From Octopus sinensis (Eukaryota), in the NCBI RefSeq assembly GCF_006345805.1, contig NW_021835804.1:1-38282 (forward strand): DNA of 38,282 nt, in the 5' to 3' direction. Within the stretch, counting starts at the first letter, position 1. Each line of letters begins with the position of its first letter. This document shows, one piece after another, positions 854-30,184 of the stretch. Made by a program: the position numbers and the translations under genes. Under the pieces are notes generated by a model that saw nothing but the letters and a program-made list of their open reading frames with translations, was not told the DNA's origin and did no database searches.

Positions 854-1852
854 ACAAAAAATATAAAAGAGAAAATATCATTTGGCTAAATATTCCCTTT
901 AATTGTGCGATCTTGACGAATGTGTACAGTAGATTTAAATCTATACTAGAAAAAAACTTCCCAGCCTCCCATAGATATCATAAAATAATTTCTAAGAGAT
1001 TAGTAAGGATTTCATATTCAACCCTCCCAAATATGTCTACCATAATAGCTAGACTTAATAGTAAAAACATTAAGTTAGCCAGGAGTAATAATATTAATAA
1101 AAATAATAATAATGGGGATAATAAAAATAAAAAATAATACTAAAAATGATGATAGCAATAATAATAATAATAACAATAATAACAACATTGATATAAATAT
1201 AAATAATCATAATAGCAATACCAGTAATGTAGGTAGTATAGGTATTGGTATGGTAGATGAGAATGATAGTGTAAATGGATCAATAAATAGTAGCCCTATT
1301 TTGGATATCAATATGACCACTAATAATGAAAATAATACTAATAATATTACTAATAATATTTTAAATAACAGTAATGTGAGAGAACTATCCTTAAATAATT
1401 CCAAATCTGAATATTATCGCCCCAGTTGTAATTGTAGGATTAGATCAAATTGTCCGGCATATGGTCGCTGTTCGGTCCAAAACGTAATTTATAAATGCAC
1501 TGTAATAACTTCTAACGGTAGCTTTTTTTTTTATCTCAGTTGTTCTGTGGATTTTAAACGATGTCTTAACGATCATTTTTCCTCTTTTTGTTTAAAACAT
1601 AAGGCAGGTTGCACTACACTATCTAGCAAAATTTTGGAACTTAAAACAAATAATATAGGATACAACCTAAAATGGGATATAGTTAGGAGGGCAAAACCTT
1701 ATAGAAATAGTAGAGTAGGCTGTCAACTCTGTTCTATGGAAACCAATGAAATTTTAAAGTATTGGAATAACAAAAATCTACTAAATAATCATCTAGAGTT
1801 AGGATCATCTTGCATACATTCCACAATTAGAACTTTTAAAAACTTTCAATAG
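854..1852 (+). pseudogene. PLE linker + GIY-YIG endonuclease, frameshifted within an (AAT)n tract
   Basis: ORFs 823..1137 and 1112..1852 are in different frames; the YIG motif reads YLS. Confidence 0.75.
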
Positions 1853-2600
1853 AAATTTAAGTTTTCCTATTTTTTCTAACTGTATCTTTTAATATAATAA
1901 TAATATAAGATATAATTTACTTTTATAGTTAACTAGATTAACCTCACTATAATCTTGAAATTGCATCTTTCCCCAAATCTATTCTAATTTTAACATTAAT
2001 ACCATTCCCCCAGTTATAAAATACGATACCTACTATAAATTAGATGAGGTTTTGTTCCCCTACACTTTGTAAAAGAATTTAATTGACCTAGATTTTTTCT
2101 CACCACATAAGAATAAATAGCTTTTTATTCTAGTGACAACATGAATTCCCTTCATGTATTCTAAATCCTTTTTTTCTGCAACTAACTTAAACCTCTTTTA
2201 CAGTATTCTTTCACATCCCCTTACCTAAATTCCTACTAAAAAATTCTGATGGCTTTCAGTTGAAAGTAGGGTTTGGTCAGTTTAGTAGCTGACCTACTAT
2301 CTCTTCTGTTCCTTAGAATTTAATGATCTTTCTACACTGACCTAAATTTTTTGTCACCACATAAATAAATTGACCCTTTGTTCTAGTGACAATCGGTTCT
2401 TCTTTTACATCTCCTGAATTTTCCTCTTCTTTTCTTCAACTAACTTGAATTCTTGACCTGCCCTTACCCCTATCCTTATAACTAAAGAAATTTTCTTACA
2501 ACAGTCAGTTGTAAACAAGGTTTTGTTCAGTTGGCATCTGAACTACACTACCTCATGTTCCTAAGATTCATATCTACATCTTTATCTGTATATTTACAGC

Positions 2601-2650
2601 TTTTAATAAAATGTTGTAGTATGAAACAATTGTACTACATTACCGGATTC
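2601..2650 (+). ncRNA. 3' half of a hammerhead ribozyme (relic; CUGANGA half deleted)
   Basis: GTAT-GAAA-C-AATT-GTA-C at 2619-2635 aligns with the intact motif at 13845-13937; no upstream CTGANGA. Confidence 0.6.
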
Positions 2651-2669
2651 ATTCTTGCTGCTTATTTTT

Positions 2670-2715
<46 letters not shown>

Positions 2716-4303: not shown

Positions 4304-4543
4304 TACTACTTCAACTGAGTAATACCTAGCCTTTTTTTATAAGTCAAAATTGCCTATCCAAAAGACAAAATCCTACTCATTCTTTTTTAATTGCTCTATC
4401 ACTCTATATTCACTTTATTTACTTCACTGCCATCTCTATATTACTTACAACAATATCATTATTTTCACTAACACAACAATAAAATAACAATATACAGGTT
4501 GATCAAGAGAAAGCAATGAGAATTGCCTCCGATTCAGCCTTAC

Positions 4544-4693
4544 CTCATCTCCTGGATTCAAGAAACCATTTATGCAACTGTAAAGAGCACCATAACCTCC
4601 AACTGAGACGAGTATTTCCTTAAATGGATCAATTGTACGGCCCATTATTGGAGAATATACCTTTGATAATATGTCAATCAATCGATGTTGTCC
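4544..4693 (-). CDS. KYAT: Kynurenine aminotransferase exon (GQHRLIDILSKVYSPIMGRTIDPFKEILVSVGGYGALYSCINGFLNPGDE)
   Basis: AG acceptor (TTGCTAG), GTAAGG donor, 150 nt, phase 0/0; matches the KAT I/III stretch GH.RL...EILV.VG.YGAL....G....GDE. Confidence 0.93.
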
Positions 4694-6031
4694 CTAGCAA
4701 TTAAGAAAAAAGTAGGTAAATACAAAAATAAAAAAAAAAACTAATAAAAATATCAAATATCTTTTCATTTGCATGCACACTCACACATGACTATAACGAG
4801 AGGAGTGAAGCTTCGGTTATCAATGTCCTCAACATGTAAGATTGGGAGCAGGAATGTGAATGGTGGAAGTGACTAGTTGTAGAGGTGAAAATAGACAACC
4901 TCTATCACACTGAATTCATTTATTTAATCTGTTGTTGGGAGAGTCATTTTCCTTTTGTGCCTTACAAACTCACCGGTAAAATTTCCACTTCTTCCTTATT
5001 TTTATTTTCCTAAAATTTTCGTTGCGTTACATAAAGAAACTTGCAAACCAAATCAAAAAATGAAATATCATTTATTTAACATTTCTAAATATCTTTTCAC
5101 ATCAGTTAATTGTACAAATACTATCTCATGAGTTAGGGATTAAAATGCATGGTAACCATTATAAAGATGGCAACAAGTTTCTTTAGAGAAATCTAGTAAC
5201 TACTTTGAGCAAATCAAGGGATTTCCTCATCTCAGTCTGAAGAAATGTCTATATACTGATAGAATATCAAAGTGTTTGGTAGCACAATCATAGAACAAAT
5301 ATGTCTTATTTTTCACAACTTAATCAAGAATACTACTGGCATTTATTATTGTTACAAATCAACTTCACAATATTAAAACTTCGAAGTCAACATTACTAGA
5401 CTTCATCATTAATTAGTGAAAGTAATTTAGCAGTTAATTCTAGCCAGATTATTTCTGACAGTGCACAGTTTGATCATAATTTAACTTTATGAAACATAGC
5501 TGACTTATTATATGTTGGCGTTGTATTCCATTCAGCACATAACAGATGTGGGAATCACAGGTGACTAAAGCGATAATACTGTAGATTAAAAGTTGAAGGG
5601 TTAGTTCAAAGTCTGCATTATTTCTGACAAAGGCATAATGCCCAGTCAAAAAGACAATTAACAGATGAGATACAGCTCATCCATGAGCTATATCTCTTTA
5701 CATAATTCATTGAGTTATGTGACACCCATCCATAACAAAAATGTAGTTGCAAGTGGAAAAGACATCACTGCTGATACTGTTATCATCAACATTTTCATTA
5801 TTGTTACTTTGATACTTGATTTTCTCTGCTGAACAGTTCTACAAAATGATAGTTTTACATGCATTTTGATGATGTCACAAATATTGTTCAATCCTGCACA
5901 CAGTATAACTATTTCTTTTTGGCTCTTACATCTACAGATACCTTCAAAAAGAAAAAGATCAGCTGCCATAATGTAAAAGTTCTCCATTTTAACTTGTAAA
6001 AATAAACAGATCAGAAGAGAGAATTACTTAC

Positions 6032-6130
6032 AAAACCTCGAGTATATTGGTGTAGTAAATGGTTCTTGTTACTAGCAGCTTCTATCATAGCATTTGTAGC
6101 AGATGGTGGTGGTTTAAAGTCTGGAAAACC
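6032..6130 (-). CDS. KYAT: Kynurenine aminotransferase exon (GFPDFKPPPSATNAMIEAASNKNHLLHQYTRGF)
   Basis: TTTCAG acceptor, GTAAGT donor, 99 nt, phase 0/0; GFPDF and QYTRGF motifs. Confidence 0.93.
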
Positions 6131-7689
6131 CTGAAATTAATACAGAGTTTGTACATATAATAGTGATTTAATATATATATTACTAACATTTTATATGACC
6201 ATTACTAACAATGTTTCCACAATGTGTTGCTGTACGCTTGAGAACATGCCGTATGAACAATAAAGATTAAAACTATCACATCTTCTTTTAAACTCTGAAC
6301 AAAAAAATCTTTGTTATAGTTAAAAACTATCTTGGATTGTTTAAAATTGCAGAGTTTATGGTAAAAGTTATATTGATTTGGTCACTTGGAATGCATAAAT
6401 GAGGAAACTGATTAAAGCATATTCTCACTAAAGCATTCCAGAAATCAAGGTGGTTTACATATGCTCCTGAAGATATCATCTAAATATTGATTATAAGACT
6501 AACACAAAATGGAGAAGAATATGGAAAAAATACAACTATGGTAACAAAATGCCAATGGCATGCAGATCATTGGTAGTTTTAGTATAAGTAATGATTACAA
6601 TTAGATATTAGTAGCTTGCTTTATAATTACATATAATACACAGAAAGCATCAACAAATATAGCATACTTTTTACAAACTTCAATAGCATACTGACATTTG
6701 CTTTGGTCTCTTGTCATCTCTTCAGTGAGGCCCAGTATCCTTCCTTTATCTTCATCTTCAATGAGAGCCTTCCACTCACTGGCCATTCCAGCAAGCATCT
6801 TTCTTGCACCATTTCAGTGATGCTGTTGATGCCCACTTATTCTATCAGCTCACCTGTGCTACACTTTCATACAAGTTAATATAATAACACTTGCTTCATT
6901 TCTCACTAACTGCTACATCTTCCAGAATCATACTCATAGGAGCAATTCAATTTATTAGTGTTCTTCTGATAACTATTCTTGTGCATCAAATACATCTAAC
7001 TTCTTGGTTCTCTGTAAGCTTACTAGAGATCCCGCTGAAATATTATGTACTTGTTAGTCTAATTGAGCACACAGTATCAAAATTCTATCAGCCATCTTTA
7101 TACATAAAGGGTAAGGCTACTTTGAACTCTTAACCATGTTTCCAGATTTTAAACATTTTCTGCAACTCTTTGGCACATTTTGCTATGCAAACCAGGTCAT
7201 CAGCTCAAAGTTCACCAGCACTCAATGAACAGAAATGACAGGAGAGAGAATCTTAGTGAACAGTTACCTGTAGACTAGATTGTTCACTGAACATGCCACC
7301 AACTCAAAGCTTGTTAGCAGTTACCTTGCAATGGTACAATCCTTAGAAGACTAAGCCCAGCACCTACCATACAACAATTCAAGAACTTCATTTACATAAA
7401 TATAAAACAGGTGTGCTTGCTTTTAGCAACAAATGTTTCTTTTGGTTGTTTCACTAGAAATATGGAATATGTGGCTTCACAACCTGAATAAATCAAAACT
7501 GCATCTTATTCAGTCTAACCTTCTCTTGAATTCAGTCCACTCTTTCACAGTCCATCAGTGTTATACCACTGGTTTTCATTTCTAGCAGTTGATGAATATG
7601 CTGCTATGTCACACATTAAGGATAGTACATTCTGGCACAACACAATTAACTAGGCAAGCATATGATCTACATATGCTTTCTAAAAAAAA

Positions 7690-8030
7690 TGGTAAAGACT
7701 CCCTTTGGTCATGAATGATCATGGGATTGCACCTAGAAAGTTTCCCTTCAAGGTGCAAGTCCAAGCAAGGTTGTTATTATGGAAAACCAGCAGTCACCCA
7801 TGTAAACCAGCCTCCCCTCACCACACCACAGATGTTATCCAAGGGAAAGGCAAAGGCCGATACAGCTTGGCACCAGTGATGTCGCAACTCATTTCTACAG
7901 ATTAGTGAACTGGAGCAACTTGAAACAGAGTGTCTTCCTCAAGAACACAGCACACAGCTCAGTCTGGGAATCAAACTCATTATATTATGATTGTGAGCCT
8001 GATGCTCTAACCACTGAGCCATGTACCTTC
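7690..8030 (-). mobile_element. tRNA-derived SINE
   Basis: Minus strand starts with TGGCTCAGTGGTTAG (A-box-like) and GAGTTTGATTCCC (B-box-like), followed by ~300 bp of SINE-like body. Confidence 0.7.
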
Positions 8031-8991
8031 ATATGTACGCTTTCTAATTCTTGGCAATTATTGTTAGTAAGCATAATGCTAAAATAATGCTTTTCCTGTC
8101 TACATATTTTTGATGATCTTAGTAACCATATCACAAGCTGACATCTGCAGAGAAAATATGGCAGGAAGAGCAGATTTGGGAATAAAACACAGAAGTGGTA
8201 ATATTTGAGGCAGGCTTGTGTGAGGGAGGCATGCAACCATCTAGTACAGAAGGAAAGAATCTACTGATATAGCAATATAATAGACAGCATATCTGTGAGC
8301 CAAAAGTGTTTGAAAGTTAGTTTTTGTCAATCAGTGGGTTGGCCATTTGGATGCAGTTGTTTGTAGGAAGTCATTAATGAATCAGGTCTGAAATATTTTC
8401 TCATTATGAGAAGAAAGGCTAAGGCCCCTTTGCAGATTTCATTTAGTGTAGTACTAGCTCTTGCACTCACATTTTTCATTCAACAATCCTTTGTAGTGGT
8501 TCAACAAATGATACATAGAATTCAAATGTCACTATATTTTGCTTTCACTATTTTTATTTTCACACCAGTAGAATGACACTAACCTAGGTTAAAAGTATAT
8601 TAATAGGATAGCAAAAATATTCATAATCAGGCATTAATAAAAGTGAACAAAATTTTTAGGGAGCATCATAAAGTAATACATAGAAACAGATGTATGTCAG
8701 ATTTAGTTGTTGTTTAGCTCAAATTTAACCTGACTGAGCCAAATGAAAGACATTCCATCTATGACTATTGCATATCCTTTCTTCAGGAATGTCTAAGACT
8801 ACATTGTCCAATGTGTCCTTTTCTTAAGATAGCAGGATGTGCTACAAGAAAAATTTTGTAACTATTTCTAAGAAGTCAACACTCTTTTATTGCACATGTC
8901 ACAACAAAAGAGATGAGCTTTGCAGCTCGAGAAATAAAGTCAAAAATTTCTAACTTAGAGTGAAGTTTAAAAAAGAAATAATTGAAGTTAC

Positions 8992-9043
8992 CTGCCCAAG
9001 GTTGACAGCATTATAGTCTACAGCCAGTTTACTCATTTCCACC
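8992..9043 (-). CDS. KYAT: Kynurenine aminotransferase exon ((W)VEMSKLAVDYNAVNLGQ)
   Basis: TTACAG acceptor, GTAACT donor, 52 nt, phase 2/0; completes W (TG|G) with the upstream exon and gives NLGQ|GFPD. Confidence 0.92.
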
Positions 9044-10546
9044 CTGTAATTACATAATGTATTTTTTCATCAAGTGAAAGATACCAAGTGTGTATGATAG
9101 AATAAAAAATAGAAGATATATAAATGGTATGATAAAGTATACAGAAACATTACGAAATTAATTAAATAAATTAAAAAATAACTTGTGTCAATGTAAATCA
9201 ATGTTAAGGAAGAATGTAATCTATTGAAATAACACCAGTACATGAGTGGCACATATTTTATCAAGATCATCATTTTACTGAACTAATGAGGAACGCTCTA
9301 CACAAGTCAACTGATCTACCAGAAATAAATGTCAAATTTACGTCAAATCATATCCTACGGTCTTAAAACAAAGGTAAAAATGCAGAGGACAATGTTCTAA
9401 AAACGTGATGTTGAAAGAAGAAAATATAGCAATGTTTGGAAAACTTTTGAACATAAGGCTGCTTGACAGGTGCCAACCTAGGACAAACAAGCTAAAGAGC
9501 TGTAAAACAATGTGAACTCAAACTAAGAAAAGACGGAACTAAAAATACTGTAAACCACTGAGTCTGACACTCTTCTATTTCTGTTTTAATAAAACAATAC
9601 ATCATACATGTTAAATTCAATGAAGAGAAAGATGGTAAGTAGGCAGGAGAGTATATGTTATTCAGTATTTAGTTTTGTTTTCATACAAGTTCAAATCATA
9701 ACAGAGTAAACTTAACTTTTCAAATATATTCTTCCCAACAAAATTGGTTTTGTGCAAAAAGAAATCAATATTAATATTACCCATTGTTTCGCTCATCACA
9801 CCAAACTAAACTTAGGTTAAAATCGCCTCAGTTCTGGAGCTGGTGGGATTATCCAGAAGTGATGGAAAGAGTGTACATGGCCTTACCATTTGTCCCTGGG
9901 TAAGAGGTATGTGCCTCATCTGAAATTCCACAGTATGTGACTCTTTTGCTCCTCCCCACATCCTGGATACAAGAGGGTAAATGAGAGTGTGACTGCTTCG
10001 GCAGCCAAATGGAACAAAATACTTAAGATTTGGGACTTATCAGATAAAAAGTTCTGCCAGTCTGTGGATTTTGAAACATTTGGAAAGGCTGGGATGCTGA
10101 CAACAAAGTTCTTTTCTTTGACAATTACCACACTAAAGTGTCAGATGATGCCTGTGAGAGGGCTTGATTGTTCAAATTCCTTAGACTGTTGCTCATGATA
10201 ATATCATAAGCATGTTGGATTGCTTCAACAGGTTCCATTGAATTTTGTGGTGTGCGGCCAACTGGGACACTTGATGTTGAATTGATGTTTTTTCTTCTTT
10301 TTTCTTTCTTTCTTACTCTTCTACTTTTCTCTCTTTGCTCATGTTTGTATTTTCTTCAGTTTTGGACTTGTATTTTCATGTGGTTTTGTTTTATATATGT
10401 ATCATATACATGTGTTTTGTATATGTAATAAAATAATTAATGTCATACTTGTTTATGAATAAGTAACTATTAATTTAGCTTGGTTAACTTAAGTTATTAG
10501 GTTGGTCTTCATTCACTCATAGCTTACATTTTTCTTCCTGTTTTAA

Positions 10547-11585
10547 CCCTTTCATTACCAAACCACCCAAAGCCACCCGAATTCATATTTAAATGAGAAT
10601 ATCAGAGCAAATCTCTTTAGTACATTCATGAAAACACGTGATTATGCTTCGTAAACAATTCATCTACAGTTTTGTACAACGATCAACATGTAATTTTAAT
10701 TCCCTGAATTTTGGGAGATTTTTTTCCACATTTTTTTCGGCATCGATTTTTCTTCAACTTTGAAAATGGATAGGAGTTTCATGTTATCAAGCATTGATTC
10801 CGAATTGGAAAATTTGTGAAACAAATACTGGGTACTGTTGTGGATTTAGTTTTTATACAGGGAAACTAATGTTAGTCAGCATGGCTTAGGGTATGATGTG
10901 GTCTGGAAGTTATTGTTTGAAGCGATCAATGCGGAAACAAATTTACGCAGATTGTAAACAAACACAAAATGGGGGTTCAAATTTCGGAAAATTTGTGAAG
11001 CAAATACTGGGTACTGTGTGGATTTAGTTTTTATACAGGGAAAATAATGTTAGTCAGCATGGCCTAGGGAACGATGTGGTCTGGAATTTATCACTTCCAT
11101 ACCATAACCAGGGCCGTATATTATTTTTTGACCAGTGGATTCCAGTATTTCACTTTATTCCACCTTTATGGTACACCTGTTGTGCATTAAATTCAACTGA
11201 TGATATAGTGAGGTGCACAATTCTTCTTTATCAAAATTTTGTTGCATACCCATTTGAATATTAGCTGATGATTCATTTTCTATGGTGATGTTTAAACAAA
11301 ATTTTAATATTTTTACCTTTTGCTCAATTTAAAATTTTAATATGTTTACCTTTTGCTCAATTTACCTGGATTTACCTGTAATTAAAGTCACTTTGAGACA
11401 AAAGTTATGCAATAGAATTGATTAAGAACCCTTTCTTTAATTATGTTCCAAATATCACATTAATATGTTGATAAGTAAAAAAGTTACAGTTATTTAATGA
11501 AACAAGCCTAGATTCATGATTATTTTAGAATTTAATTGAAACTCATGAGGGGTGTATTTTGGTCAGAAATATAGTAACGAAAGGG
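10547..11585 (+). mobile_element. Complete non-autonomous piggyBac element with transposase core fragments
   Basis: TTAA at 10543-46 and 11586-89; TIRs CCCTTTCATTAC / GTAACGAAAGGG. The interior encodes KWGFKF.KICEANTGY..DVVWNLSLPYHNQGRILFFD, with a ~110-bp segment duplicated near 10808 and 10986. Confidence 0.9.
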
Positions 11586-11828
11586 TTAAATTATCAAAAA
11601 TACTATCATTCTCAAAACACAAACTGTAATTACTAGTTAATTTTACAAATTACTTTTTTGTTTAGAATACATTTACTTTATGTTCTATTATAAAGAAATT
11701 TCCAAGCTGGTATTCTTCTAAATGTCATCGGAGATGTCAGAATACTGACAACTGATTTGATCCAATCTGACTGACAAAACCTGTTCTAGTGCTACATTAT
11801 GAATGAGTGGTTAGCAACACAAAAGTGC

Positions 11829-12310
11829 ATTATCATTTAGCGTCTGTTTTCCATGCTGGCATGGGTTAAACAGTCTGACTGGAACTGGCAAGCCAGAGAG
11901 CTGATTTTAGCTTGGTTTCTACAGTTGAATACCCTTCCTGACACCAACCACTCCAAGAGTGCAGTGGGTGCCTTTTAAATGTCACCAGCACAGGTGCCTT
12001 TTACATGTCACTGGCACTGTCCTTCACTACGATTTCACTTGGCCTGACAAATTTTCTCAAGCACAGCAAACTGCCAACATCTGTGAGACCTACCATCTGA
12101 AGATCATGCTTGTCCTATGTCTTCCTGGATCCACAGGTTCCATCAACAGTTAGAGACTGGCACTTCTTTATGCAGCTGTCCTTGTCTGTAAGTATCATAT
12201 CACCATACCAGCACAGTCTTCTCTCTTGCACATCGCATATCATGCCTCTTATGCCCAATTTTTCTTTCAAGATGCTTACATTCTGTTGTACATACACACT
12301 GACATTACAA
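11829..12310 (-). mobile_element. 5'-truncated RTE-clade LINE
   Basis: KLGIRG...VQERRLCWYG...DSCIKKC..L.VDGTCG.RKT is the RT C-terminus; the 3' UTR and tail match the copy at 20972-22124. Confidence 0.8.
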
Positions 12311-12541
12311 AAAGGGGGCACCCAATCCAACTATAAATTTAATCCCTTCAACAGTATATAAATGTTGAAGCAATTGGTTTTACAACTGAATGCTCTTGAT
12401 TTTACAATTCCATTCATATAAGCATGGAAAATACAAGTCACTGCCATCAGTCATGGTAATAACATCTCCATCAGTGACATTGGTATCATCAACATTTTGT
12501 GTCCTTTCTTCCATGCAGATATGAGTTAGACTGAATAATAA

Positions 12542-12825
12542 GTTATTTCAGTTCTGGTTGGTAAATTATTGACCCCATATTTCTAGTGAACTAACTATGC
12601 TAACATATGAAACTATGGAGATGAAGTACACAATAAAGAAGGGATTTGGAAATATGGGGTCAATATTGGGGTACATAAACATATATATATATATAAACAT
12701 ACACACATGAAATATTTCCAAATCCCTTCTTTATTGTGTACTTCATCTTCATAGTTTCGTATGTTAGCATAGTTAGTTCACTAGAAATATGGGGTCAATA
12801 ATTTACCAACCAGAACTGAAATAAC
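12542..12825. repeat. Inverted repeat / MITE-like element with ~114-bp arms
   Basis: 12542-12655 is the near-exact reverse complement of 12712-12825 (about 2 mismatches); ~56-bp spacer. Confidence 0.85.
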
Positions 12826-12993
12826 ATTGTTTTAGCCTTCGAATGACGCAGGCCAACAGAAGAAAGAGTGGAGAAAGAGTGGTGAAAGAGTACAGCAGGG
12901 ATCACCACCCCCTGCCGGAGCCTCGTGGAGCTTTTAGGTGTTTTCACTCAATAAACACACACAACATCCGGTCTGGGAATCGATTAAACCTCG
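12826..12993 (-). mobile_element. Truncated copy of the SINE at 13236-13540
   Basis: Nearly identical over ~130 bp apart from one internal deletion. Confidence 0.85.
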
Positions 12994-13201
12994 CCAAGTT
13001 AAATATTTAAACCACCTGAAGAATGACTGTAACTTGAAAATTTTAAGAATTGAACAGCCATGAAACGATCGTAGTGTTATATTAATTATCTTTTTTAATG
13101 ATTTTGATATATATTTAAAAAATACAAATTAATTAATCTTATGTATTGGCTTAAGTTTTTCATTGTATGATTTGCCTAATAGTGGTTTTATCTCTAATTT
13201 A

Positions 13202-13235
<34 letters not shown>

Positions 13236-13238
<3 letters not shown>

Positions 13239-13540
13239 TGTGACCACGTGACCGACCAGACCATCAGATGTTGTTACACATTGCTGGTCACAATGCGTTC
13301 GCATTGTTTTAGCCTTCGAATGACGCCACCCCTCTGGCTAAGCAAGCAGGCCAACAGAAGAAAGAGTGGAGAAAGAGTGGTGAAAGAGTACAGCAGGGAT
13401 CACCACCCCCTGCCGGAGCCTCGTGGAGCTTTTAGGTGTTTTCGCTCAATAAACACACGCAACGCCCGATCTGGGAATCGGAACCGCGATCCTGCAACCG
13501 CAGGTCCGCTGCCCTAACCACTAGGCCATTGCGCCTCCAC
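13236..13540 (-). mobile_element. Full-length tRNA-derived SINE inside a (TA)n tract
   Basis: Minus 5' end GTGGAGGCGCAATGGCCTAGTGGTTAGG (A box) and GGTTCCGATTCCC (B-box-like); TA repeats on both flanks. Confidence 0.88.
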
Positions 13541-13612
<72 letters not shown>

Positions 13613-13680
13613 AATATATATATAATATATATATATAAATATATATATATAAATATATATATAAATATATATATAAATAT

Positions 13681-13722
<42 letters not shown>

Positions 13723-13735
13723 ATATATACACACA
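13541..13735. repeat. (TA)n microsatellite
   Basis: Direct inspection. Confidence 0.95.
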
Positions 13736-13814
13736 CTCAAATGAATATGGTACTTAATTTAGATGCACCAGAATTTTGTATGGTGTTATCCATAAAAATC
13801 CGTGGGGTGATTAT

Positions 13815-14765
13815 AATCAAAATAAGCAACAAGAATGATTCCGGTAATTTGGTACGATCGTTTCGTACTACATCATTTTATTAAATGTTGTAAGTATTAC
13901 AACAGATTTAAGATGCTGAGTACTCATCAGCCAATTATAGAGGTTTTCCATTAATACAAAAATTTTCAAATCAAGTGGCAACATTATAGAGAAGGTAGAT
14001 ATATAGACAAAGATGTGGATTTAAATGTTAAGAACATATGAGGTAGTAGAGTCCCTCCACTGACTGACTAAGATTTGATTGTTCCAGACTGCTGTAAGGT
14101 TGTGAGAGGGAGAAGTAAGCAATAAAGATTTTCTAATTGTAGAAATGGGGCAAAGGGGGATTCAGAACTCCATAAAAGGAATTCATGTGGAAGACAACAA
14201 TTCTCACTACTAAATTTCAATTACTACTATTTGATGAGAGAACTAGGTCAATGTCAAGTGGTCACTATCACATTCACAGAGAGTGCAATTTGGAGAAAAA
14301 AAACTATCACTTATTACGAGTAGGCATAGTACTTTTTAACTGGAGGAAAGCCTTATTAATTTTAAAGCCAGTTTAATTTTAGAAAAAAGAATTCAATTTC
14401 AAGTTTGTAGTGAAGATTTTTTAGTCATCTATGAATGTGAAATTGAAAGCCAGTATGGTATATTCCTTCTTATTTGATTATAAAGAATTACAATTTGAAA
14501 AATATAGGAATACTCACAAAATTATTATTTAAAGTATTTAAACGTTCGGGTTGTACGATGTATACAAGATACTCCCAACTCCAAATGGTTATTCAACAGA
14601 TTTGTATTATTCTGATGTTTCAAAATTTCATAAGTTTCCATAGAACAAAGTTGACAACCATCCCTGCTATTTCTATAAGGTTGCACCCTTCTTACTATTT
14701 CCCATTTTAGGTTGAATTCTATATTATTTGTTTTTAGTTCCCAAATTTTGCTAGATAATGCAGAT
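13815..14765 (-). mobile_element. Penelope-like element 3' fragment (endonuclease C-terminus, 3' UTR, HHR)
   Basis: ORF 14525..14857 contains LSSKIWELK..KWEIVRRVQPYRNSRDGCQLCSMET..LLNNHLELGVSCIH, homologous to 1112..1852; the downstream DNA aligns with 1853-2676. Confidence 0.87.
13845..13937 (-). ncRNA. Type I hammerhead ribozyme, complete core
   Basis: Minus strand: UAAUUGG-CUGAUGA-GUAC[long hairpin]GUAC-GAAA-C-GAUC-GUA^CCAAAUUA; predicted cleavage between 13853 and 13852. Confidence 0.85.
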
Positions 14766-14789
14766 GGTGAACACACAGAACAACCGTTG

Positions 14790-15388
14790 GCTTGACATGT
14801 ACTAAAAGTGATAAAAATCAAACAGCCAATCAACATCATGATGTTTGGAGTGATCACTTAGTGATGGCAACATTATACCTTCATTCATCTTCCCACACAG
14901 CCTCACACTCAACATGGAGGCCTACATCAAGTGCCTGGAGGAGGCAGTGCTACCCTGGGTCAAGAGGATGGTTGCTGGAAGACCCTATATCTGGTAACAG
15001 GACTCTGCACTATGCCATACAAGCAGGAGAACCCAGTCATGGCTGTCAGACAACTTCTGCAACCACATTACCCCTAACATCTGGCTCCCTAACTCCCCAG
15101 ACTGCAACCCCCTTGATCACTATGTGTGGGACACAGTTGAGCGAGAGACCAACAAAATTCTTTGTAACACCACAGATGAACTGAAGACAAAGATTATGGC
15201 AGCATTGACTAACTTAAACGAGACCATCCAGAAGAGTTGAAGCCAATGGCGATTTTATTGAATAAATTTACTCTTTAGTATTTTAAGATATTTTTATGTA
15301 ATTTTGGTAAATATATCTGTTAAAATGAGATGTCAGTGTCATTTTCACTTCTGCATTATATAGATAACAATATATTCACCACACCCTG
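14790..15388 (+). mobile_element. Tc1/mariner DD37D (maT-type) transposase 3' fragment with probable right end
   Basis: Translates to IMMFGVI...PYIW*QDSALCH...IWLPNSPDCNPLDHYVW; 37 residues lie between the second and third Asp; ends CACCCTG followed by TA. Confidence 0.82.
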
Positions 15389-15734
15389 TATATATACTAG
15401 AAAGACAGAAAGATATCCATATAAAAGCCAACTATACTGTCTTCAAAGAGGAAGAATTAAGGATAGTAATTCTTCAACAATGGAACTGGTAACTACTAAT
15501 ATCCTCTATTAATGATATTCTGTAGCTAATACAAAGAAATAGTGGCAGCAGCAGCAAAAGTGGTATTAGTAACAAATATAGTAAAACAAATAATTATTGA
15601 TGTAAATTTGAAAAGTGGAAATTTTGATTTTTTTTCAGTAATTAAATAAGTAGATAGAAATAAAAATATATAAATAATGTGACAGACAAAAGACAGTAAA
15701 TAATAATAAAAATAATGATATTCCTATCTACAAA

Positions 15735-15910
15735 AGGCGCCAAGCTTGAAATTTATTGGGAGAGGGTTAGTTGATTACATCAACTCCAGTGCATAACTGG
15801 TATTTATTTCACTGACCTCAAAAGGATGAAAGGCAAAGTCATCTTCATAGAATTTGAACTCAGAAGATAAAGACAGATGAAATGCCATTAAGCATTTTGT
15901 CTGACATGCT
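15735..15910 (-). mobile_element. SINE, same family as 16864-17230 and 19380-19590
   Basis: Reverse complement shares TGAGTTCAAATTC..TTTGCCTTTCATCC..AAATAAATACCAG with those copies. Confidence 0.7.
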
Positions 15911-16099
15911 AAAAAAAAGGTAATAATAATAACAAAGAAAAGAAGAAAAATCTGATGAGGAGAAAAGAAAAGAAAGGAATTGATGATGAAGAAGAAAAGA
16001 GGTAAGGAGAACAGAGAGGTACAGAGAGATAATAATAAATAATTGAAATAGCCCAGCTTCAGATCAAATCATTTGCCAGATTATAAATGAGAGAGTATG

Positions 16100-16560
16100 C
16101 ATATTATAAGAGTGTGTGTGTATGTGTGAAACAGTACAGGCCATGTACAGGAATGCTGATAGTAAGGTAAGAGTTAGCCATGGGTACAGTTATGAATTTA
16201 GTGTACAGGCAGGTGTTTGCCAGGGCTCAATCCTCAGCCCCCTCCTATTCATCATTGTCTTCCGGACCATAACAGAGGAGTTTAGGACTGGAAGCCCATG
16301 AGAACTACTAAGTGCTGATGATCTTGTCCTCATAGCAGAATCTGTAACAGAATTAGAAAAGAAATTCTCAGTGTAGAAAAAAACCTAGAATCAAAGGGCT
16401 TTAAAGTAAATGTAACTAAGACCAAGGTCCTAGTAAGCAAAAGATTGGAAAGGACCCTTCACCCTTCAGTAAATGGCCCTGCTCAATATGTAAGAAGGAT
16501 GTAAGCAAAATTCCATTTGGTGTACAAAGAGTGCAGTAGAGAGGTTAACACAGGAAATTG
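16100..16560 (+). mobile_element. RTE-clade reverse transcriptase fragment
   Basis: VQAMYRNADSKVRV..GV.QGSILSPLLFIIV..ELL.ADDLVLIAES. Confidence 0.85.
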
Positions 16561-16863
16561 TATGTATAAGCAAGAACTTGTCTGATCAAAGCTATGTACA
16601 TTTTACATTTTTTTCATTATAACACGAACAGCAATAACTGATGTGAGCTAACAAGAGAGAGGATGAAAGGTATAGGAAAGAGGTAACACAAGAGCAGAGA
16701 GATTAAACACTACAATGAAGACAAAACTGCAGCAGAGAAACAGTGGAAACATGAAAGAAAACAGTATTTACAAAAAATGAGAGAAAAAGCTCAACAACCA
16801 AGAAATTCTTATGGCCTCATTTACTTATTTCATCATCATCAGTTGTAGTAATAGTAGTATTTG

Positions 16864-17230
16864 TAAGGTGGTGAGCTAGCAGAATTGTTAGCATACTGGA
16901 CAAAATGTTTAGAGACATTTCTTCCAACTCCTTACATTCTGAGTTCAAATTCCACTGAGGTCAACTTTTTCATCCTTTTGTGGTCAATAAAATAAGTACC
17001 ACTTGAATTCTGGGGTTGGTGTAATCGGCTTATACCCAATCCCCAAACTGCAGGCTTTGTGCCAAAATTTGAAATCCTTATTATTATTGTTATTCTGCTG
17101 AGGTCAACTTTACCTTTCTTCCTCTTGGGATCAATAAAATAAGTACCAGTTGAGCACTGGGGTCAATATAATCAACTTATCCCCAATCCCCAAATTGCTG
17201 GCCTTGTGCCAAAATTTGAAATCATTATTA
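16864..17230 (+). mobile_element. Two tandem SINE copies (second one partial)
   Basis: Repeated body GAGGTCAACTTT..AATAAAATAAGTACC..GTGCCAAAATTTGAAATC with (TTA)n tails. Confidence 0.8.
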
Positions 17231-17231
17231 C

Positions 17232-18342
17232 TATTACCTCCACCTTCGCAAAAGCAGAGGTATTGTTTTCAGTTGAGTTTGTTTGTCCATGGACAAGATA
17301 TCTCAAGAACTTCTAGATAGATTCAGATGAAACTTTCAGTGATGTTTGGCCTTGTGACTGGCATGAACTGATTAGATTTTGGGATCGATCCAGAACTGGA
17401 CAAGGATTCTGGATTATTTGTTATATTTACTTTACATGAAGTATTACAATATTATGTTCTTTGATTATCTCCCTTGAAAGCACACTCATGGTTTCCATGT
17501 AAGTTATAGCAGTGTTGCTGTTTCCAAAGTTTTATTTTCGTTTCTTTATTATTAATTTTACTTGCATCTCTATCTTAGTAGAAACTGATAGATAAAGAAA
17601 TCAAACTGCATAAACAAACAGCAGCAAAACCATTCAGAAATTAAATAACACTAACATATTCAGTAATAATGATAAATTTAATTTATCCTTGACAACTTTT
17701 AGTTTTATCAATTTTGAATATATCACTCCTGTTTAAAACCTACTTGACATTTCTAGCTCTAACTTCAAGGTAGCTTTACTTCTTGGACTCAAGTTTTTGA
17801 GTGCAACAATGTTGTTAAACCTCCATCAACAGCTCCGTATGCAGGTCTTTTCCATTTTCTTTCACGCATGGATAAATTTTTCACTATAGATTTTAATGGT
17901 CGTAGAGACATATCAGTGGATAGACTAAAAATGGATTCACGTATTTGTGTGCAATGATGTTGTTAAATCTTCATTAACAGCACCGTATGCAGGTCCTTTC
18001 CATTTTCTTTCACACAGATAAATTTTTCACTATAGACCTTAATGGTCATAAAGACACTATATCAGTGGATAGACTAAAAAAGGCCTTCATAGAGAAAACT
18101 GTCTCTATTCCCACTACAGACGACACACACACGAGCATTACAAACACGGCCCGCACACCCACCTTCACATTCCATGACTACCATTTGCATTGGTCAGGTA
18201 CCGGACAAGGATTCAGGATTGTTTTTCCAGTTTTTTACCTTAATTTCTGAGAGCAGTTGGGTTCATTTTTAGTTTCTCGCTTGTGAGAGCAGTCGAGTTT
18301 AGTCTTGCCTTGGCAGAGGTCTGCACTCTCTGAGTGCTGTTG
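17232..18342 (+). mobile_element. Helentron/HINE-like element interrupted by an ~800-bp insert
   Basis: 5' TTACCTCCACC..AGAGG and 3' TTGGCAGAGGTCTGCACTCTCTGAGTGCT; GGACAAGGATTC repeated near 17398 and 18204. Confidence 0.5.
17815..18110 (+). pseudogene. Two tandem Gypsy integrase C-terminal fragments
   Basis: [32 protein letters not shown] (frameshifted), homologous to [21 protein letters not shown] at ~25570-25685. Confidence 0.75.
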
Positions 18343-18375
18343 TTATTATTATCATTATTATGATTATGATTACTA

Positions 18376-19372
18376 AGGCAGCAAGCTGGCAGAACTGTTA
18401 GCACACTGGACAAAATGTTTAGCAGCATTTCATCCACCTTTACATTCATCATCATCATCATCATCATCCAGTGTTTTAAATTTGGGCTTTGCCCCCACTA
18501 ATGGGGGTGGCCAGATCTATCTCAATGCCACTGTAACTGCCCTCACACCATCTCACCATGTTTTGGGCGTCCTTCCTTCTCAAGCCAACCTTCCCAATCT
18601 CCTCCTCCATCTGTCCCCTTGTTTTTCTCAGTCCATTTACCTCAAATTCAAGCACCCTGCCCAGAATATGCTTCTTAATCCTCCTCAACACATACCCATA
18701 CCACCGCACTCCATTCGTCCTTACAAGCCATTCCACTGATTCCTCCAACCCCAGCATCCCCATCAAGTCCTCAGTCCTCTTCTTATCAAACAGTTTCACT
18801 CCATACATTTCTCTCACCATTGCTCTCTCAGTCCTTCTCAAAATTGACATCTCTCTCTCCCTCCGAGACTATGTCTCACTCTCATACAGCATTGCAGCTC
18901 TCACGCAATTCCTACAGACCCTTCCTTTCATCTTCAATGAGAACCTTTTCCCATATAACAATGCTCCACATTCCCTGAACTTCACCCAGTCAAGTCTTGC
19001 TCTTGCTGTCACAGCTGCTTCACATCCACCCTATCTCCCAAATAACAAAATCCTCTCACCGTTTCCACCTTTGTTACATAACATTTCCACTGGTTCTGCC
19101 AGCCCTCCAGCTCCATTCTCACATCTTCTACAAACAAACTTTCTTGCCAGTATTGGGGTCACCTTCACCATTTTCGTACATCTACAATGAGTCCATTTCT
19201 CACATTGTGAGTTCAAATTCTGTCAAGGTGAACTTTGCCTTTCATTGTTTCTTTTTTTTTGTGGGGGTGGGGGTGGGGTCAATAAAATAAGTACCACTCA
19301 CGTACTAGGGTGATGTAATCAACTTTCCCTTCCCATGAAAAGCTGCTGGCCATGTGCCAAAATTTGAAATCA
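18376..19372 (+). mobile_element. SINE split by an RTE insertion (5' half 18376-18446, 3' half ~19202-19372)
   Basis: The two halves join into one copy matching 19380-19590. Confidence 0.75.
18447..19201 (-). mobile_element. 5'-truncated RTE-clade LINE with (ATG)n tail
   Basis: ILRRTERAMVR.M.GVKL..NGVRWYG.VLRR; ACATT on both sides (18442-46, 19202-06) is a candidate TSD. Confidence 0.85.
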
Positions 19373-19379
19373 TTGTCAT

Positions 19380-19590
19380 TGAGAGCTGACAGAATTGTTA
19401 GAACACTGGACAAAATGCTTAGCGGCATTTCGTCTGTCTTCACGTGTTGAATTCAAATTCTGCCAAAGTCAACTTTACCTTTCATCTTTTTCAGGTTGAT
19501 AAAATAAGTACTTGTTAAACACTGTGGTCAATGTAATCGACTCACCCTCTCCCCCAAAATTGCTGCCCTTGTGGTAAAATTTGAAACCAT
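19380..19590 (+). mobile_element. SINE
   Basis: Same family as 16864-17230; (TTA)n tail. Confidence 0.8.
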
Positions 19591-19693
19591 TATTATTTAT
19601 TATTATAAACATTGTTCATTGTCCTGGGCAAAAATATTTGACACTACAGCTTAAAATGGATGCATGAAAAATAAGTAAGTAAATAAAACTCAC

Positions 19694-19749
19694 CAAACAT
19701 TCTTTTCACTGCCATAGTATTTCTTGGCCAATGAAAGTTTAGTTGACAT
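19694..19749 (-). CDS. KYAT: Kynurenine aminotransferase exon (MSTKLSLAKKYYGSEKNV + TG)
   Basis: TACAG acceptor followed by AAAA-ATG; GTGAGT donor; phase 2 joins the 8992-9043 exon to give NVWVE. Confidence 0.88.
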
Positions 19750-29057: not shown

Positions 29058-29270
29058 ATTTTGTGAAATAGAAAGATGAATAATCTAGTAGTAGATTAAT
29101 CAAAAGTTTAACCGATACCTTAGTAGCAAAAATCACAGCAGTGAACAGCACGGTTGGAGGTACAACCATCTGGCGTTGCAACCGTGCGTTGGTGCGGATA
29201 ATTGAAATTAAAACATTATTGGTGAATTGAAGAAATGGAGCTGAACGCAGATTGAACAGAAATCGTTTTA

Positions 29271-29361
29271 TTTCATTCTACACGTGTTTCGAAAGGCACA
29301 AATTACCAAAATCCGATTGAATAATGGGACCATATTGTGTCTTTCTCTTCAGGAAGAAAAA
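29271..29361 (-). ncRNA. Type I hammerhead ribozyme (left arm)
   Basis: UUUCUUC-CUGAAGA-GAAAG..CUUUC-GAAA-C-ACGU-GUA^GAAUGAAA; predicted cleavage between 29279 and 29278. Confidence 0.8.
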
Positions 29362-29532
29362 AGGAAATCCGTTGGAAAAACAAAAACAGAACAGAGGCAG
29401 AGCAAAAAACAAATCGAACTGTGCTCCTAAGAGCCCATGGCGAAACTCTTCGCCATGGGCTCTTAGGAGCACAGTTCGATTTGTTTTTTGCTCTGCCTCT
29501 GTTCTGTTTTTGTTTTTTCCAACGGATTTCCT

Positions 29533-29625
29533 TTTTTCTTCCTGAAGAGAAAGACACAATATGGTCCCATTATTCAATCGGATTTTGGTAATTTGTGCCT
29601 TTCGAAACACGTGTAGAATGAAAAA
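29533..29625 (+). ncRNA. Type I hammerhead ribozyme (right arm)
   Basis: CTGAAGA at 29542-48, stem II GAAAG/CTTTC, GAAA at 29604-07, C-ACGT-GTA; predicted cleavage after 29615; stem I TTTTTCTTC/GAA(T)GAAAAA. Confidence 0.82.
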
Positions 29626-30184
29626 TAAACGATTTCTGTTCAATCTGCGTTCAGCTCCATTTCTTCAATTCACCAATAATGTTTTACATATATAATATAT
29701 ATATATATATATATACTATATATATACATATATATATATCCGGTTCCGTTTTCAGCAGAGAAGGACGTGATTGCCTTTGCTCTGTGAAAAAGTTTGCATA
29801 GAATGGCGAAATAACCCACTGTAGTTGCAAAACGTAAAACTCTAAGTCATAGAGATCACTACAACACTTTGGTTAAAAATATTTTTTAAAATATATATAA
29901 ATATATACATATACACAGTAATTTTCATTTTCGCCGAAACGCACATGGTGCAAAAATAACTAAATCAAGTTATCTCCTGCAAGAAAGAAAAAGAAGTATC
30001 TCTCCTGAAAAATCCCGTAAACCAAAAAAAAATAATCCAGACCACATTGTTGGATTAAGTATCAATTTCATCTCTTTCATATTTTATTTATTATTCTATT
30101 TTATCTTTCACTTAGGCCCACATCTTAGTTAAAGTTGCGATCGTCATTTTGTTTGTTTACATTTTCAATATATGTTCTCGATAT

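What the first reader, a model, noticed from the sequence alone, without database searches (positions are those of the whole stretch)
13845..13937. Intact hammerhead ribozyme at a PLE 3' end, in sense with the KYAT intron
Seen: complete core CUGAUGA/GAAA, GUAC/GUAC stem II extended by a long hairpin (UGUUGUAA-UAC-UUACAACA), stem I UUGG/CCAA, and cleavage triplet GUA. It lies on the same strand as the host pre-mRNA, in the intron between the 19694 and 9043 exons. Inference: it could cut the nascent transcript, but the 2-bp stem III suggests it needs a dimer partner and may be nearly silent as a single copy.
Basis: partly seen in the sequence, partly recalled or inferred. Interest (0 to 1): 0.72.

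Follow-up and report, generated by a model that had tools for sequence, protein, structure and literature searches.

The report
Retrotransposon hammerhead ribozyme inside octopus intron
The motif is a real, complete hammerhead ribozyme, but it is the standard tail ribozyme of a broken Penelope-like retrotransposon that landed in an intron of the octopus KYAT3 gene. This kind of element is already described, and as a lone copy it is probably almost inactive.

Summary
On the minus strand, 13937..13845, there is a complete type I hammerhead:
- helix I UAAUUGG/CCAA(A)UUA
- core box CUGAUGA
- helix II GUAC/GUAC, carrying a 51-nt imperfect hairpin
- GAAA
- the palindrome CGAUCG as helix III
- cleavage site GUA|C at 13853/13852

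Chance does not explain it. Shuffled windows give 0-0.01 such motifs. Rfam Hammerhead_1 aligns over its full length but below threshold (19.6 bits, threshold 34). Two paralogous Octopus sinensis copies keep all helices through five compensatory double changes, including one that preserves the helix III palindrome.

The motif sits about 110 nt from the 3' end of a 5'-truncated, roughly 1-kb copy of a Hydra-clade Penelope-like element (PLE). That copy is inserted at a (TA)n microsatellite. It lies in sense orientation in intron 1 of a KYAT3 gene model; the window is scaffold VCDQ01000347.1.

The short palindromic helix III, the fold energies and the published biochemistry of PLE and newt-type hammerheads all indicate a ribozyme that works as a dimer. 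A solitary intronic copy should therefore cleave little or not at all.

No RNA data were available, so activity is untested.

The parts
13845..13937 (-). Complete type I hammerhead ribozyme motif
   Evidence: Read directly from the sequence. Found by the descriptor scan. Full-length Rfam RF00163 alignment, 19.6 bits, E=0.012. Not expected by chance.
13931..13937 (-). Helix I, 5' strand (UAAUUGG)
   Evidence: Pairs with 13852-13845 (CCAA-A-UUA, one bulged A). The four inner pairs are kept in the O. sinensis copies through G-U wobbles.
13924..13930 (-). Catalytic box CUGAUGA (C3-A9)
13865..13923 (-). Helix II: GUAC(U)/(A)GUAC closing a 51-nt imperfect hairpin. The apical hairpin UGUUGUAA-UAC-UUACAACA lies at 13904-13886.
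   Evidence: Fold predictions. Compensatory changes at pair 10.1-11.1 (GC/AU), at pair 10.5-11.5 (UA/GC) and at two apical pairs (UA/CG).
13854..13864 (-). GAAA box (13864-13861) and the self-complementary helix III segment ACGAUCGU (13861-13854)
   Evidence: As a monomer it forms only 2-3 bp around a 2-4-nt loop. As a dimer it forms 8 intermolecular bp. The palindrome is preserved as CAAUUG in L002 and in window copy 1 through a double change.
13852..13853 (-). Predicted self-cleavage site, GUA|C (after A17 at 13853, before C1.1 at 13852)
   Evidence: Position follows from the hammerhead numbering in the Rfam alignment. Cleavage itself was not tested.
13845..13852 (-). Helix I, 3' strand (CCAAAUUA)
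13737..14770 (-). 5'-truncated copy (about 1.03 kb) of a Hydra-clade Penelope-like element: the last ~74 codons of the GIY-YIG endonuclease plus the whole 3' tail
   Evidence: tblastn and blastn against the 809-aa O. sinensis copy in L002. Alignment with window copy 1. Clade-defining motifs (PMC8557442).
14525..14764 (-). Remnant of the GIY-YIG endonuclease ORF, including the stop codon (…CQLCSMETYEIL…LLNNHLELGVSCIH…)
   Evidence: [quoted passage not shown]
13541..13729 (.). (TA)n microsatellite adjoining the element's 3' end (the target site)
   Evidence: Tandem Repeats Finder. Hydra-clade PLEs insert into (TA)n (PMC8557442).
9044..19693 (-). Intron 1 of the KYAT3 gene model. It contains the hammerhead in sense orientation, 5.76 kb from the donor site and 4.80 kb from the acceptor site.
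   Evidence: Exon 1 is 19749..19694 and exon 2 is 9043..8992. NCBI model P0160 spans 19749..4445 on this scaffold.
856..2676 (+). Second, longer 5'-truncated copy of the same PLE family. It is antisense to KYAT3 and downstream of exon 4. Only a mutated 3' half of the hammerhead remains (about 2595-2645: …GUAU GAAA CAAUUG UA CUAC…); a deletion of roughly 105 nt removed the CUGAUGA half.

Best explanation
The feature is the genuine type I hammerhead carried in the 3' tail (pseudo-LTR region) of a Hydra-clade Penelope-like retrotransposon of Octopus sinensis.

Role in the element's own life cycle (inferred from the literature). Tandem or pLTR-flanked copies are transcribed as RNAs longer than one unit, which carry two hammerheads. 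The self-complementary ACGAUCGU segments of the two motifs pair into an extended helix III, forming a double hammerhead. Each helix I forms between the two motifs. The RNA is cut after GUA, giving 5'-OH and 2',3'-cyclic phosphate ends. The element's own protein possibly assists.

What this locus holds (shown). The copy is a dead-on-arrival, 5'-truncated insertion of about 1 kb at a (TA)n tract in intron 1 of KYAT3. It lies by chance in the same orientation as the gene, so the KYAT3 pre-mRNA contains exactly one sense hammerhead.

Expected behaviour here (inferred).
- The motif has no partner in cis.
- As a monomer it is predicted to prefer a non-catalytic fold.
- It should therefore cleave the pre-mRNA rarely or not at all, and is best seen as a passenger of the intron.
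For: Motif:
- It is complete and non-random.
- 98% of cells pair across three copies, with 5 doubly compensated pairs against 0-1 in the slid controls.

Element identity:
- The ORF remnant and tail are contiguous and collinear with an 809-aa O. sinensis copy.
- The family has 2,211 relatives, with the endonuclease domain always C-terminal.
- Full-length 722-aa members carry RWK, DKT, YRDD, CxCX5C, CxxC and CxH motifs, matching the published Hydra clade definition (PMC8557442).
- Best structural matches of a low-confidence model are TERT, followed by other reverse transcriptases.
- pLTRs flank the ORF in Argonauta.
- A distant member has a compact hammerhead about 140 nt after its stop codon.
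- The element ends at a (TA)n target.

Dimer dependence:
- Monomer minimum free energy is -18.6 kcal/mol in a non-hammerhead fold, against -13.3 when forced into the hammerhead fold.
- The double-hammerhead dimer is -40.8, against -37.2 for two separate monomers.
- Single PLE hammerheads showed no cleavage in vitro, and dimeric or trimeric constructs only low cleavage (PMC4209133).
- Axolotl hammerheads with a short helix III cleave well only as dimers (PMC7229834).

No partner: no other minus-strand hammerhead lies within 4445-19749.

Host gene.
Against: - No RNA or biochemical data were available, so cleavage by monomer or dimer is untested for this sequence.
- The unconstrained dimer prediction (-47.0 kcal/mol) is not the double-hammerhead fold. 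Nearest-neighbour energies also ignore tertiary contacts.
- The covariation rests on only three copies, two of them close to each other.
- Hammerhead cleavage was not needed for PLE insertion in vitro, and no reads ended at the hammerhead cut site in Anolis (PMC11167929). The role of these motifs in the PLE life cycle is therefore still unsettled.
- Pfam sees no RT domain in the family. The profile match to PDB RTs is not significant. Clade assignment rests on motifs, not on a phylogeny.
- The host gene model is a truncated 151-aa model on an unplaced scaffold, so it may not be the functional KYAT3 copy.
Confidence: 0.8

Rival explanations
1. The hammerhead is active in its intronic context and cuts nascent KYAT3 pre-mRNA. 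This could happen as a monomer helped by proteins, or in trans with transcripts of other copies. Expression would then be lowered or tuned, as proposed for the conserved intronic hammerheads of amniotes and the CPEB3 ribozyme.
For: - It is in sense orientation and has a complete core.
- About 4.8 kb of intron remains to be transcribed after the motif, which gives time for cleavage before splicing.
- A PLE hammerhead cleaved only when the element's protein was added (PMC11167929).
- Retrozyme repeats are under-represented in Xenopus introns, which suggests such motifs can be harmful in genes.
Against: - Helix III is too short for a stable monomer, and the predicted monomer fold sequesters both core boxes.
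- There is no second sense motif in the gene.
- Single PLE hammerheads were inactive in vitro (PMC4209133).
- No evidence of orthologous conservation could be obtained.
- The insertion looks like an ordinary truncated transposon copy among many in this window.
Confidence: 0.08
2. The motif is conserved in the element for a reason other than self-cleavage, for example as a folded RNA handle recognised by the PLE reverse transcriptase, or as a selfish hitch-hiker on PLEs. It never cleaves appreciably, even as a dimer.
For: - Catalytic hammerhead mutants did not affect PLE insertion in vitro, and no reads ended at the hammerhead site in vivo (PMC11167929).
- Naiad PLEs thrive without hammerheads, and the authors suggest that hammerheads may simply parasitise PLEs (PMC8557442).
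- An alternative hairpin (GUAYGA/UYGUAC) that hides the cleavage site is also kept in all three copies.
Against: - All catalytic core nucleotides are kept, not just the helices.
- The helix III palindrome, which matters only for dimer formation, is preserved by a double change.
- Dimeric PLE hammerheads do cleave, although weakly (PMC4209133).
Confidence: 0.1
3. The motif belongs to a non-autonomous non-LTR retrozyme (a short tandem repeat producing circular RNA), not to a PLE copy.
For: It is a type I hammerhead with low GC content. Retrozymes are thought to derive from PLE pLTRs.
Against: - There is no tandem repeat of 150-450 bp around it.
- The motif is contiguous with the endonuclease ORF remnant, in the same order as in protein-coding copies.
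Confidence: 0.02
4. It is a chance match to the hammerhead consensus in AT-rich DNA.
For: The Rfam score is below the gathering threshold, and the whole-window scan found nothing.
Against: - Zero of 300 shuffles gave a motif of this quality.
- Homologous copies show compensatory changes.
- Three further PLE-type hammerheads lie in the same window.
Confidence: 0.01

Closest known systems
Hammerheads in the pseudo-LTRs of Penelope-like elements (Cervera & De la Pena 2014, PMC4209133)
   Same: Both are type I motifs in the repeat or tail region of PLEs. Both have a long helix II, a short helix I, and a very short helix III with a palindromic sequence that implies action as a dimer. In both cases most genomic copies are solitary motifs from truncated elements, sometimes in opposite orientation a few hundred bp apart.
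   Different: This one has a real 6-nt palindrome (8 with A15.1 and U16.1) rather than the no-helix-III 'minimal' form. [quoted passage not shown] Its helix II is unusually long (59 nt in all).
Hydra clade of C-terminal EN+ PLEs (Craig et al. 2021, PMC8557442)
   Same: Short single-ORF elements with RWK and DKT motifs, a CxCX5C linker, CxxC and CxH motifs in the endonuclease, no CCHH motif, insertion into (TA)n and detectable hammerheads. Molluscs are listed among the hosts.
   Different: The octopus family carries a long asparagine-rich low-complexity insert between the linker and the endonuclease. No phylogeny was made here. The window copy is only a 1-kb 3' fragment.
Newt or salamander satellite 2 and axolotl retrozyme hammerheads (PMC7229834)
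   Same: Type I hammerheads with a helix III too short for the monomer. They cleave efficiently only as double hammerheads.
   Different: Those sit in tandem arrays of about 330 bp that supply the partner. This copy is solitary.
Poseidon PLE of Anolis carolinensis (PAc) hammerhead (Mob DNA 2024, PMC11167929)
   Same: A PLE-borne hammerhead whose cleavage is weak on its own.
   Different: The PAc motif overlaps the ORF start, needs the PLE protein to cleave, and was shown to be dispensable for insertion in vitro. Nothing is known for the octopus motif.
Conserved intronic hammerheads of amniotes (HH9/HH10; De la Pena & Garcia-Robles 2010, cited in PMC7229834) and the intronic CPEB3 ribozyme (PMC10274809)
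   Same: A self-cleaving motif in sense orientation inside an intron of a protein-coding gene.
   Different: Those are stable monomeric ribozymes conserved at orthologous positions over long evolutionary times. This one is a dimer-type motif within a recognisable transposon fragment, with no evidence of conservation at the locus.

Membership tests
Hammerhead ribozyme, type I | Conserved core: C3 U4 G5 A6 N7 G8 A9, G12 A13 A14, A15.1-U16.1, and H17 before the cleavage site | tested here: met
   CUGAUGA … GAAA … U-A|C, read on the minus strand and aligned by Rfam RF00163.
Hammerhead ribozyme, type I | Helices I and II base-paired around the core, with helix I open (type I topology) and a G10.1-C11.1 pair | tested here: met
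   Helix I has 4+3 bp with one bulge. Helix II is GUACU/AGUAC plus an extended hairpin. 98% of cells pair, with 5 compensated pairs across three copies.
Hammerhead ribozyme, type I | Score at or above the Rfam gathering threshold for RF00163 (34 bits) | tested here: not met
   19.6 bits, E=0.012, full model length. No hit in the whole-window or 401-nt scans. The shortfall comes from the 51-nt insertion in helix II.
Hammerhead ribozyme, type I | Stable helix III in the monomer | tested here: not met
   Only A-U, C-G and G-C around a 2-nt loop, or 2 bp around a 4-nt loop. The hammerhead-constrained monomer is 5.3 kcal/mol less stable than the minimum free energy fold. This is typical of the dimer-type animal and PLE hammerheads.
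Hammerhead ribozyme, type I | Site-specific self-cleavage giving 5'-OH and 2',3'-cyclic phosphate ends | not testable with these tools
   No RNA or biochemical data.
Penelope-like elements, Hydra clade | Single ORF with an RT followed by a C-terminal GIY-YIG endonuclease | tested here: met
   - In relatives (P0038 and P0042, 722 aa; the 809-aa ORF in L002): FDI.DFYPSI, YRDDG and FLD motifs upstream of the endonuclease.
- The endonuclease is C-terminal in all listed hits.
- Weak Pfam GIY-YIG hits.
- Foldseek top hits are TERT and other RTs, from a low-confidence model.
- Pfam RVT_1 is not detected.
- The window copy keeps only the last ~74 codons.
Penelope-like elements, Hydra clade | RWK motif present and DKG changed to DKT | tested here: met
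   RMRWKAF and ADKTNN/ADKSNN in P0038 and P0042; ADKTGN in the L002 ORF. Not observable in the truncated window copies.
Penelope-like elements, Hydra clade | [quoted passage not shown] | tested here: met
   Window copy 1: CNCRIRSNC, CQLC…E…N…CIH. Window copy 2: CQLC…CIH.
Penelope-like elements, Hydra clade | Insertion into (TA)n; short element; pseudo-LTRs or tandem and inverted arrangements | tested here: met
   - (TA)n adjoins the 3' ends of both window copies and of the L002 copies.
- 980-bp direct repeats flank the ORF in Argonauta L001.
- An inverted truncated copy lies upstream of the L002 ORF.
- Contigs of 2.6-3.0 kb hold the whole ORF.
Penelope-like elements, Hydra clade | Phylogenetic placement with the Repbase Hydra families | not tested
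   No reference PLE sequences were available. Profile comparison with a canonical PLE in L002 aligned RT motif A and the GIY-YIG core only weakly (E=0.12 and 0.0011).
Non-LTR retrozymes | Head-to-tail repeats of 150-450 bp, each with a type I hammerhead and no ORF | tested here: not met
   No such tandem repeat around the motif. The motif is contiguous with an ORF remnant.
Domesticated intronic ribozymes (amniote HH9/HH10 type) | Conservation at the orthologous intronic position across species | not testable with these tools
   The KYAT3 search returned no other cephalopod orthologue from which a locus could be fetched.

The most novel reading that the evidence does not exclude
A transposon-derived, dimer-type hammerhead lying in sense orientation in the first intron of KYAT3 is occasionally activated. 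The trigger could be PLE protein, or pairing in trans with transcripts of sister copies through the ACGAUCGU palindrome. It would then cut the nascent pre-mRNA, coupling expression of a kynurenine-pathway enzyme to retrotransposon activity. A conserved alternative hairpin would act as the off-state of a conformational switch.
Probability: 0.05. Interest if true: 0.6.

Novelty: new member of a known kind. Interest (0 to 1): 0.25.

Why it matters
The case is mainly useful for annotation. It shows that PLE-type hammerheads with long helix II insertions escape Rfam thresholds, yet can be recognised from the core, the palindromic helix III and the element context. It also documents a Hydra-clade PLE family in Octopus, with its ribozyme supported by covariation.

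If sense-oriented copies like this one did cleave host pre-mRNAs, they would be a widespread and overlooked source of transcript truncation in PLE-rich invertebrate genomes. Nothing here indicates that this copy does so.

Tried and rejected
- Rfam at gathering threshold on the whole window, and an E-value scan of 13700-14100, gave no hammerhead hit. Only the 121-nt scan recovered RF00163. The shorter O. sinensis copy in L002 was not recovered at all.
- Pfam found nothing in the window's PLE ORF pieces or the 120-aa KYAT fragment, and no RT in full-length family members.
- The family profile against PDB sequences gave only a non-significant RT match, E=1.
- The AlphaFold model was poor (pLDDT 56), so its Foldseek matches are only indicative.
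- The word-indexed protein search found just two relatives. The exhaustive search was needed.
- Marine-metagenome and Logan contigs L003 and L005-L008 showed no hammerhead and no DNA similarity to the tail. They end within 120-600 nt of the ORF, so this is uninformative.
- The KYAT search gave no other cephalopod orthologue, so the presence or absence of the insertion at the orthologous intron could not be tested.
- ARAGORN found no tRNA in the SINE-like repeats next to the element.
- The idea that the nearby plus-strand hammerhead at 13013-13076 could serve as a partner was rejected. It is on the other strand, so the KYAT3 pre-mRNA carries only its complement.

Full report
**Observation**

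The motif is on the minus strand. Read 5'->3' from 13937 to 13845 it is:

UAAUUGG CUGAUGA GUAC-[51 nt]-GUAC GAAA CGAUCG UA|CCAAAUUA.

All conserved hammerhead positions are present: C3-A9, G12-A14, the A15.1-U16.1 pair, the G10.1-C11.1 pair, and A17 before the cleavage site between 13853 and 13852. The 51-nt insert folds into an imperfect hairpin.

I tested chance with a descriptor requiring the core, helices I and II, a palindromic helix III and UH. It finds four motifs in the window against a mean of 0.01 in 300 dinucleotide-preserving shuffles. The strict version finds one against none.

Rfam gave no hit on the whole window or on a 401-nt stretch. On the 121-nt stretch, Hammerhead_1 (RF00163) is the best match. 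It aligns over its full length at 19.6 bits (gathering score 34) with E=0.012. The shortfall is due to the long helix II insertion.

**The element**

A 110-codon ORF runs on the minus strand from 14857 to 14528, 590-680 nt upstream of the motif. Its last ~74 codons (14764..14543) match the C-terminus of a longer ORF at 823-1852 on the plus strand. The two copies also share the non-coding tail that follows the ORF.

An exhaustive protein search found 2,211 relatives. In these the domain is always C-terminal, and the longest are 722-806 aa. The full-length proteins carry:
- an RWK motif;
- ADKT(N/G)N;
- RT-like FDI.DFYPSI, YRDDG and FLD motifs;
- a W(F/Y)NPP(F/Y) linker;
- a CxCX5C motif;

This is the published description of the Hydra clade of Penelope-like elements. 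That clade consists of short elements (<3 kb) with DKG changed to DKT, RWK present, a CxCX5C linker, no CCHH motif, insertion into (TA)n and canonical hammerheads. Its hosts include molluscs (PMC8557442).

Further support for the assignment:
- An Octopus sinensis locus (L002) has an 809-aa ORF of this family. A hammerhead lies about 1.1 kb downstream of it, and an inverted truncated copy lies upstream.
- An Argonauta hians locus (L001) has 980-bp direct repeats, 98% identical, flanking the ORF. These are pseudo-LTRs, and each contains a hammerhead-like motif.
- A distant marine-metagenome member (L004) has a compact type I hammerhead about 140 nt after its stop codon.
- A low-confidence structure model of a 722-aa member matched TERT best, then other reverse transcriptases.

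Sequence-only tests of the RT were weak.

The window copy that carries the motif spans about 14770..13737. It is 5'-truncated, and it ends at the (TA)n tract 13541-13729.

**Conservation of the ribozyme**

I aligned the window motif with the two L002 copies. In this alignment 98% of cells form standard pairs. Five pairs show compensatory double changes, against 0-1 in the slid controls:
- pair 10.1-11.1, GC to AU;
- pair 10.5-11.5, UA to GC;
- two pairs of the apical hairpin, UA to CG;
- the middle pair of helix III, so that CGAUCG becomes CAAUUG and stays self-complementary.

The last change matters only if helix III forms between two copies.

The second window copy keeps only a mutated 3' half (GUAU GAAA CAAUUG UA CUAC, about 2595-2645). 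A deletion of roughly 105 nt removed the CUGAUGA half.

The sample is only three copies, two of them closely related, so the statistics are indicative.

**Host gene**

On the minus strand, 19749..19694 encodes MSTKLSLAKKYYGSEKNVW and ends at a GT donor site. After an AG acceptor site, 9043..8992 continues with VEMSKLAVDYNAVNLGQ. Two further exons follow, at about 6133-6030 and 4693-4540.

The concatenated 120 aa match the NCBI protein 'kynurenine--oxoglutarate transaminase 3 [Octopus sinensis]' at 100%. That protein maps to a contig of exactly 38,282 bp, VCDQ01000347.1 of GCA_006345805.1, with the gene spanning 19749..4445. The window is therefore that unplaced scaffold.

The hammerhead lies in sense orientation in intron 1, 5.76 kb from the donor site and 4.80 kb from the acceptor site.

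The gene model is truncated. It has 151 aa and reads into the intron after exon 4. Whether this scaffold holds the functional gene copy is open.

**Mechanism**

As a monomer, helix III has at most three pairs around a 2-nt loop. The predicted minimum free energy fold (-18.6 kcal/mol) is not a hammerhead. It pairs GCUGA with UCAGC, and GUACGA with UCGUAC, which hides both core boxes and the cleavage site. The hammerhead-constrained fold is -13.3 kcal/mol.

A double hammerhead has an 8-bp intermolecular ACGAUCGU helix and swapped helix I strands. It is predicted at -40.8 kcal/mol, against -37.2 for two separate monomers. The unconstrained dimer optimum (-47.0) is a different structure.

The published work agrees with a dimer requirement:
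- Animal PLE hammerheads have short palindromic helices III. They were inactive as single motifs and weakly active as dimers or trimers (PMC4209133).
- Amphibian motifs with a short helix III cleave well only as dimers (PMC7229834).
- An Anolis PLE hammerhead cleaved only with the element's protein, and was dispensable for insertion in vitro (PMC11167929).

No second minus-strand hammerhead lies within the gene. The most likely reading is that this motif served the retrotransposon and is here a nearly silent passenger. That it cleaves KYAT3 pre-mRNA remains possible but unsupported.

**Comparison and novelty**

Hammerheads in PLE pseudo-LTRs, the Hydra clade, solitary truncated copies, inverted pairs and (TA)n targeting are all documented. 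PLEs are a known, old component of octopus genomes (PMC13282606).

The features specific to this case are:
- the long, covarying helix II;
- the asparagine-rich insert in the octopus ORF;
- the incidental sense-intronic position.

This is a new member of a known kind, and its interest is modest.

No step had to be referred.

Noticed in passing
window 13013-13076 (+): A second PLE-type hammerhead from a different family: CAC CUGAAGA AUGACUGU…ACAGCCAU GAAA CGAUCG UA GUG. It has the same CGAUCG palindrome and lies on the opposite strand, about 770 bp from the main motif. It sits in a tail fragment of roughly 220 bp that ends at a (TA)n tract (13202-13236) and appears to be inserted into a SINE-like repeat.
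   Followed up: partly
window 29209-29686: A near-perfect palindrome of about 478 bp (arms 97% complementary), flanked by (TA)n. It consists of two head-to-head truncated PLE tails. Each carries a hammerhead of a third family (CUGAAGA GAAAG…CUUUC GAAA CACGUG UA GAA), at 29539-29618 (+) and 29355-29276 (-).
   Followed up: partly
window 856-2676 (+): A longer 5'-truncated copy of the same Hydra-clade PLE lies antisense to KYAT3, downstream of exon 4. Its ORF has an (AAT)n-rich low-complexity insert with a frameshift, and its hammerhead has lost the 5' half. A piggyBac-like fragment may lie just upstream (about 130-560); Pfam did not confirm this.
   Followed up: partly
window 13240-13540 and 12825-12990 (-): Two copies (96-100% identical over the shared parts, spaced 498 bp apart) of a SINE-like repeat. 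By eye its 5' end looks tRNA-like (GGCCTAGTGGTTAGGG…GGTTCCGATTCCC). ARAGORN calls no tRNA there.
   Followed up: partly
window 13865-13852 (-) and L002 copies: An alternative hairpin (GUAYGA-loop-UYGUAC) sequesters the helix II 3' strand, the GAAA box and the cleavage site. RNAalifold predicts it in all three copies. It could be the off-state of a monomer/dimer switch, or simply a by-product of the hammerhead's own sequence constraints.
   Followed up: no
window 4445-19749 (-): The NCBI KYAT3 model on this unplaced scaffold is only 151 aa and ends by reading into the intron after exon 4. Exon 5 is not in the window. The scaffold may be a haplotig or a partial duplicate of the gene.
   Followed up: partly
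window 14790-15250 (+): Directly at the 5' truncation point of the PLE copy there is a transposase-like reading frame (…QDSALCHTSRRTQSWL…WLPNSPDCNPLDHYVW…) that resembles the C-terminus of a Tc1/mariner-type DDE transposase. It has one stop codon, and Pfam gave no hit.
   Followed up: partly
window 24058-25857 (+) and 32076-34550 (+): An LTR-retrotransposon pol fragment (RNase H, integrase zinc-binding domain and integrase core) and a LINE fragment (endonuclease plus RVT_1). Long TA-rich, low-complexity arrays lie at about 27.4-29.2 kb and 35.5-37 kb.
   Followed up: partly
L002 9844-12093 (-) and 1209-1934 (-): The O. sinensis comparison locus also carries canonical PLE fragments from a clade other than Hydra. 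They show an RT with RYLDDCF and a GIY-YIG domain with NVIYCITC…YVGET. Several PLE clades therefore coexist in this genome.
   Followed up: no
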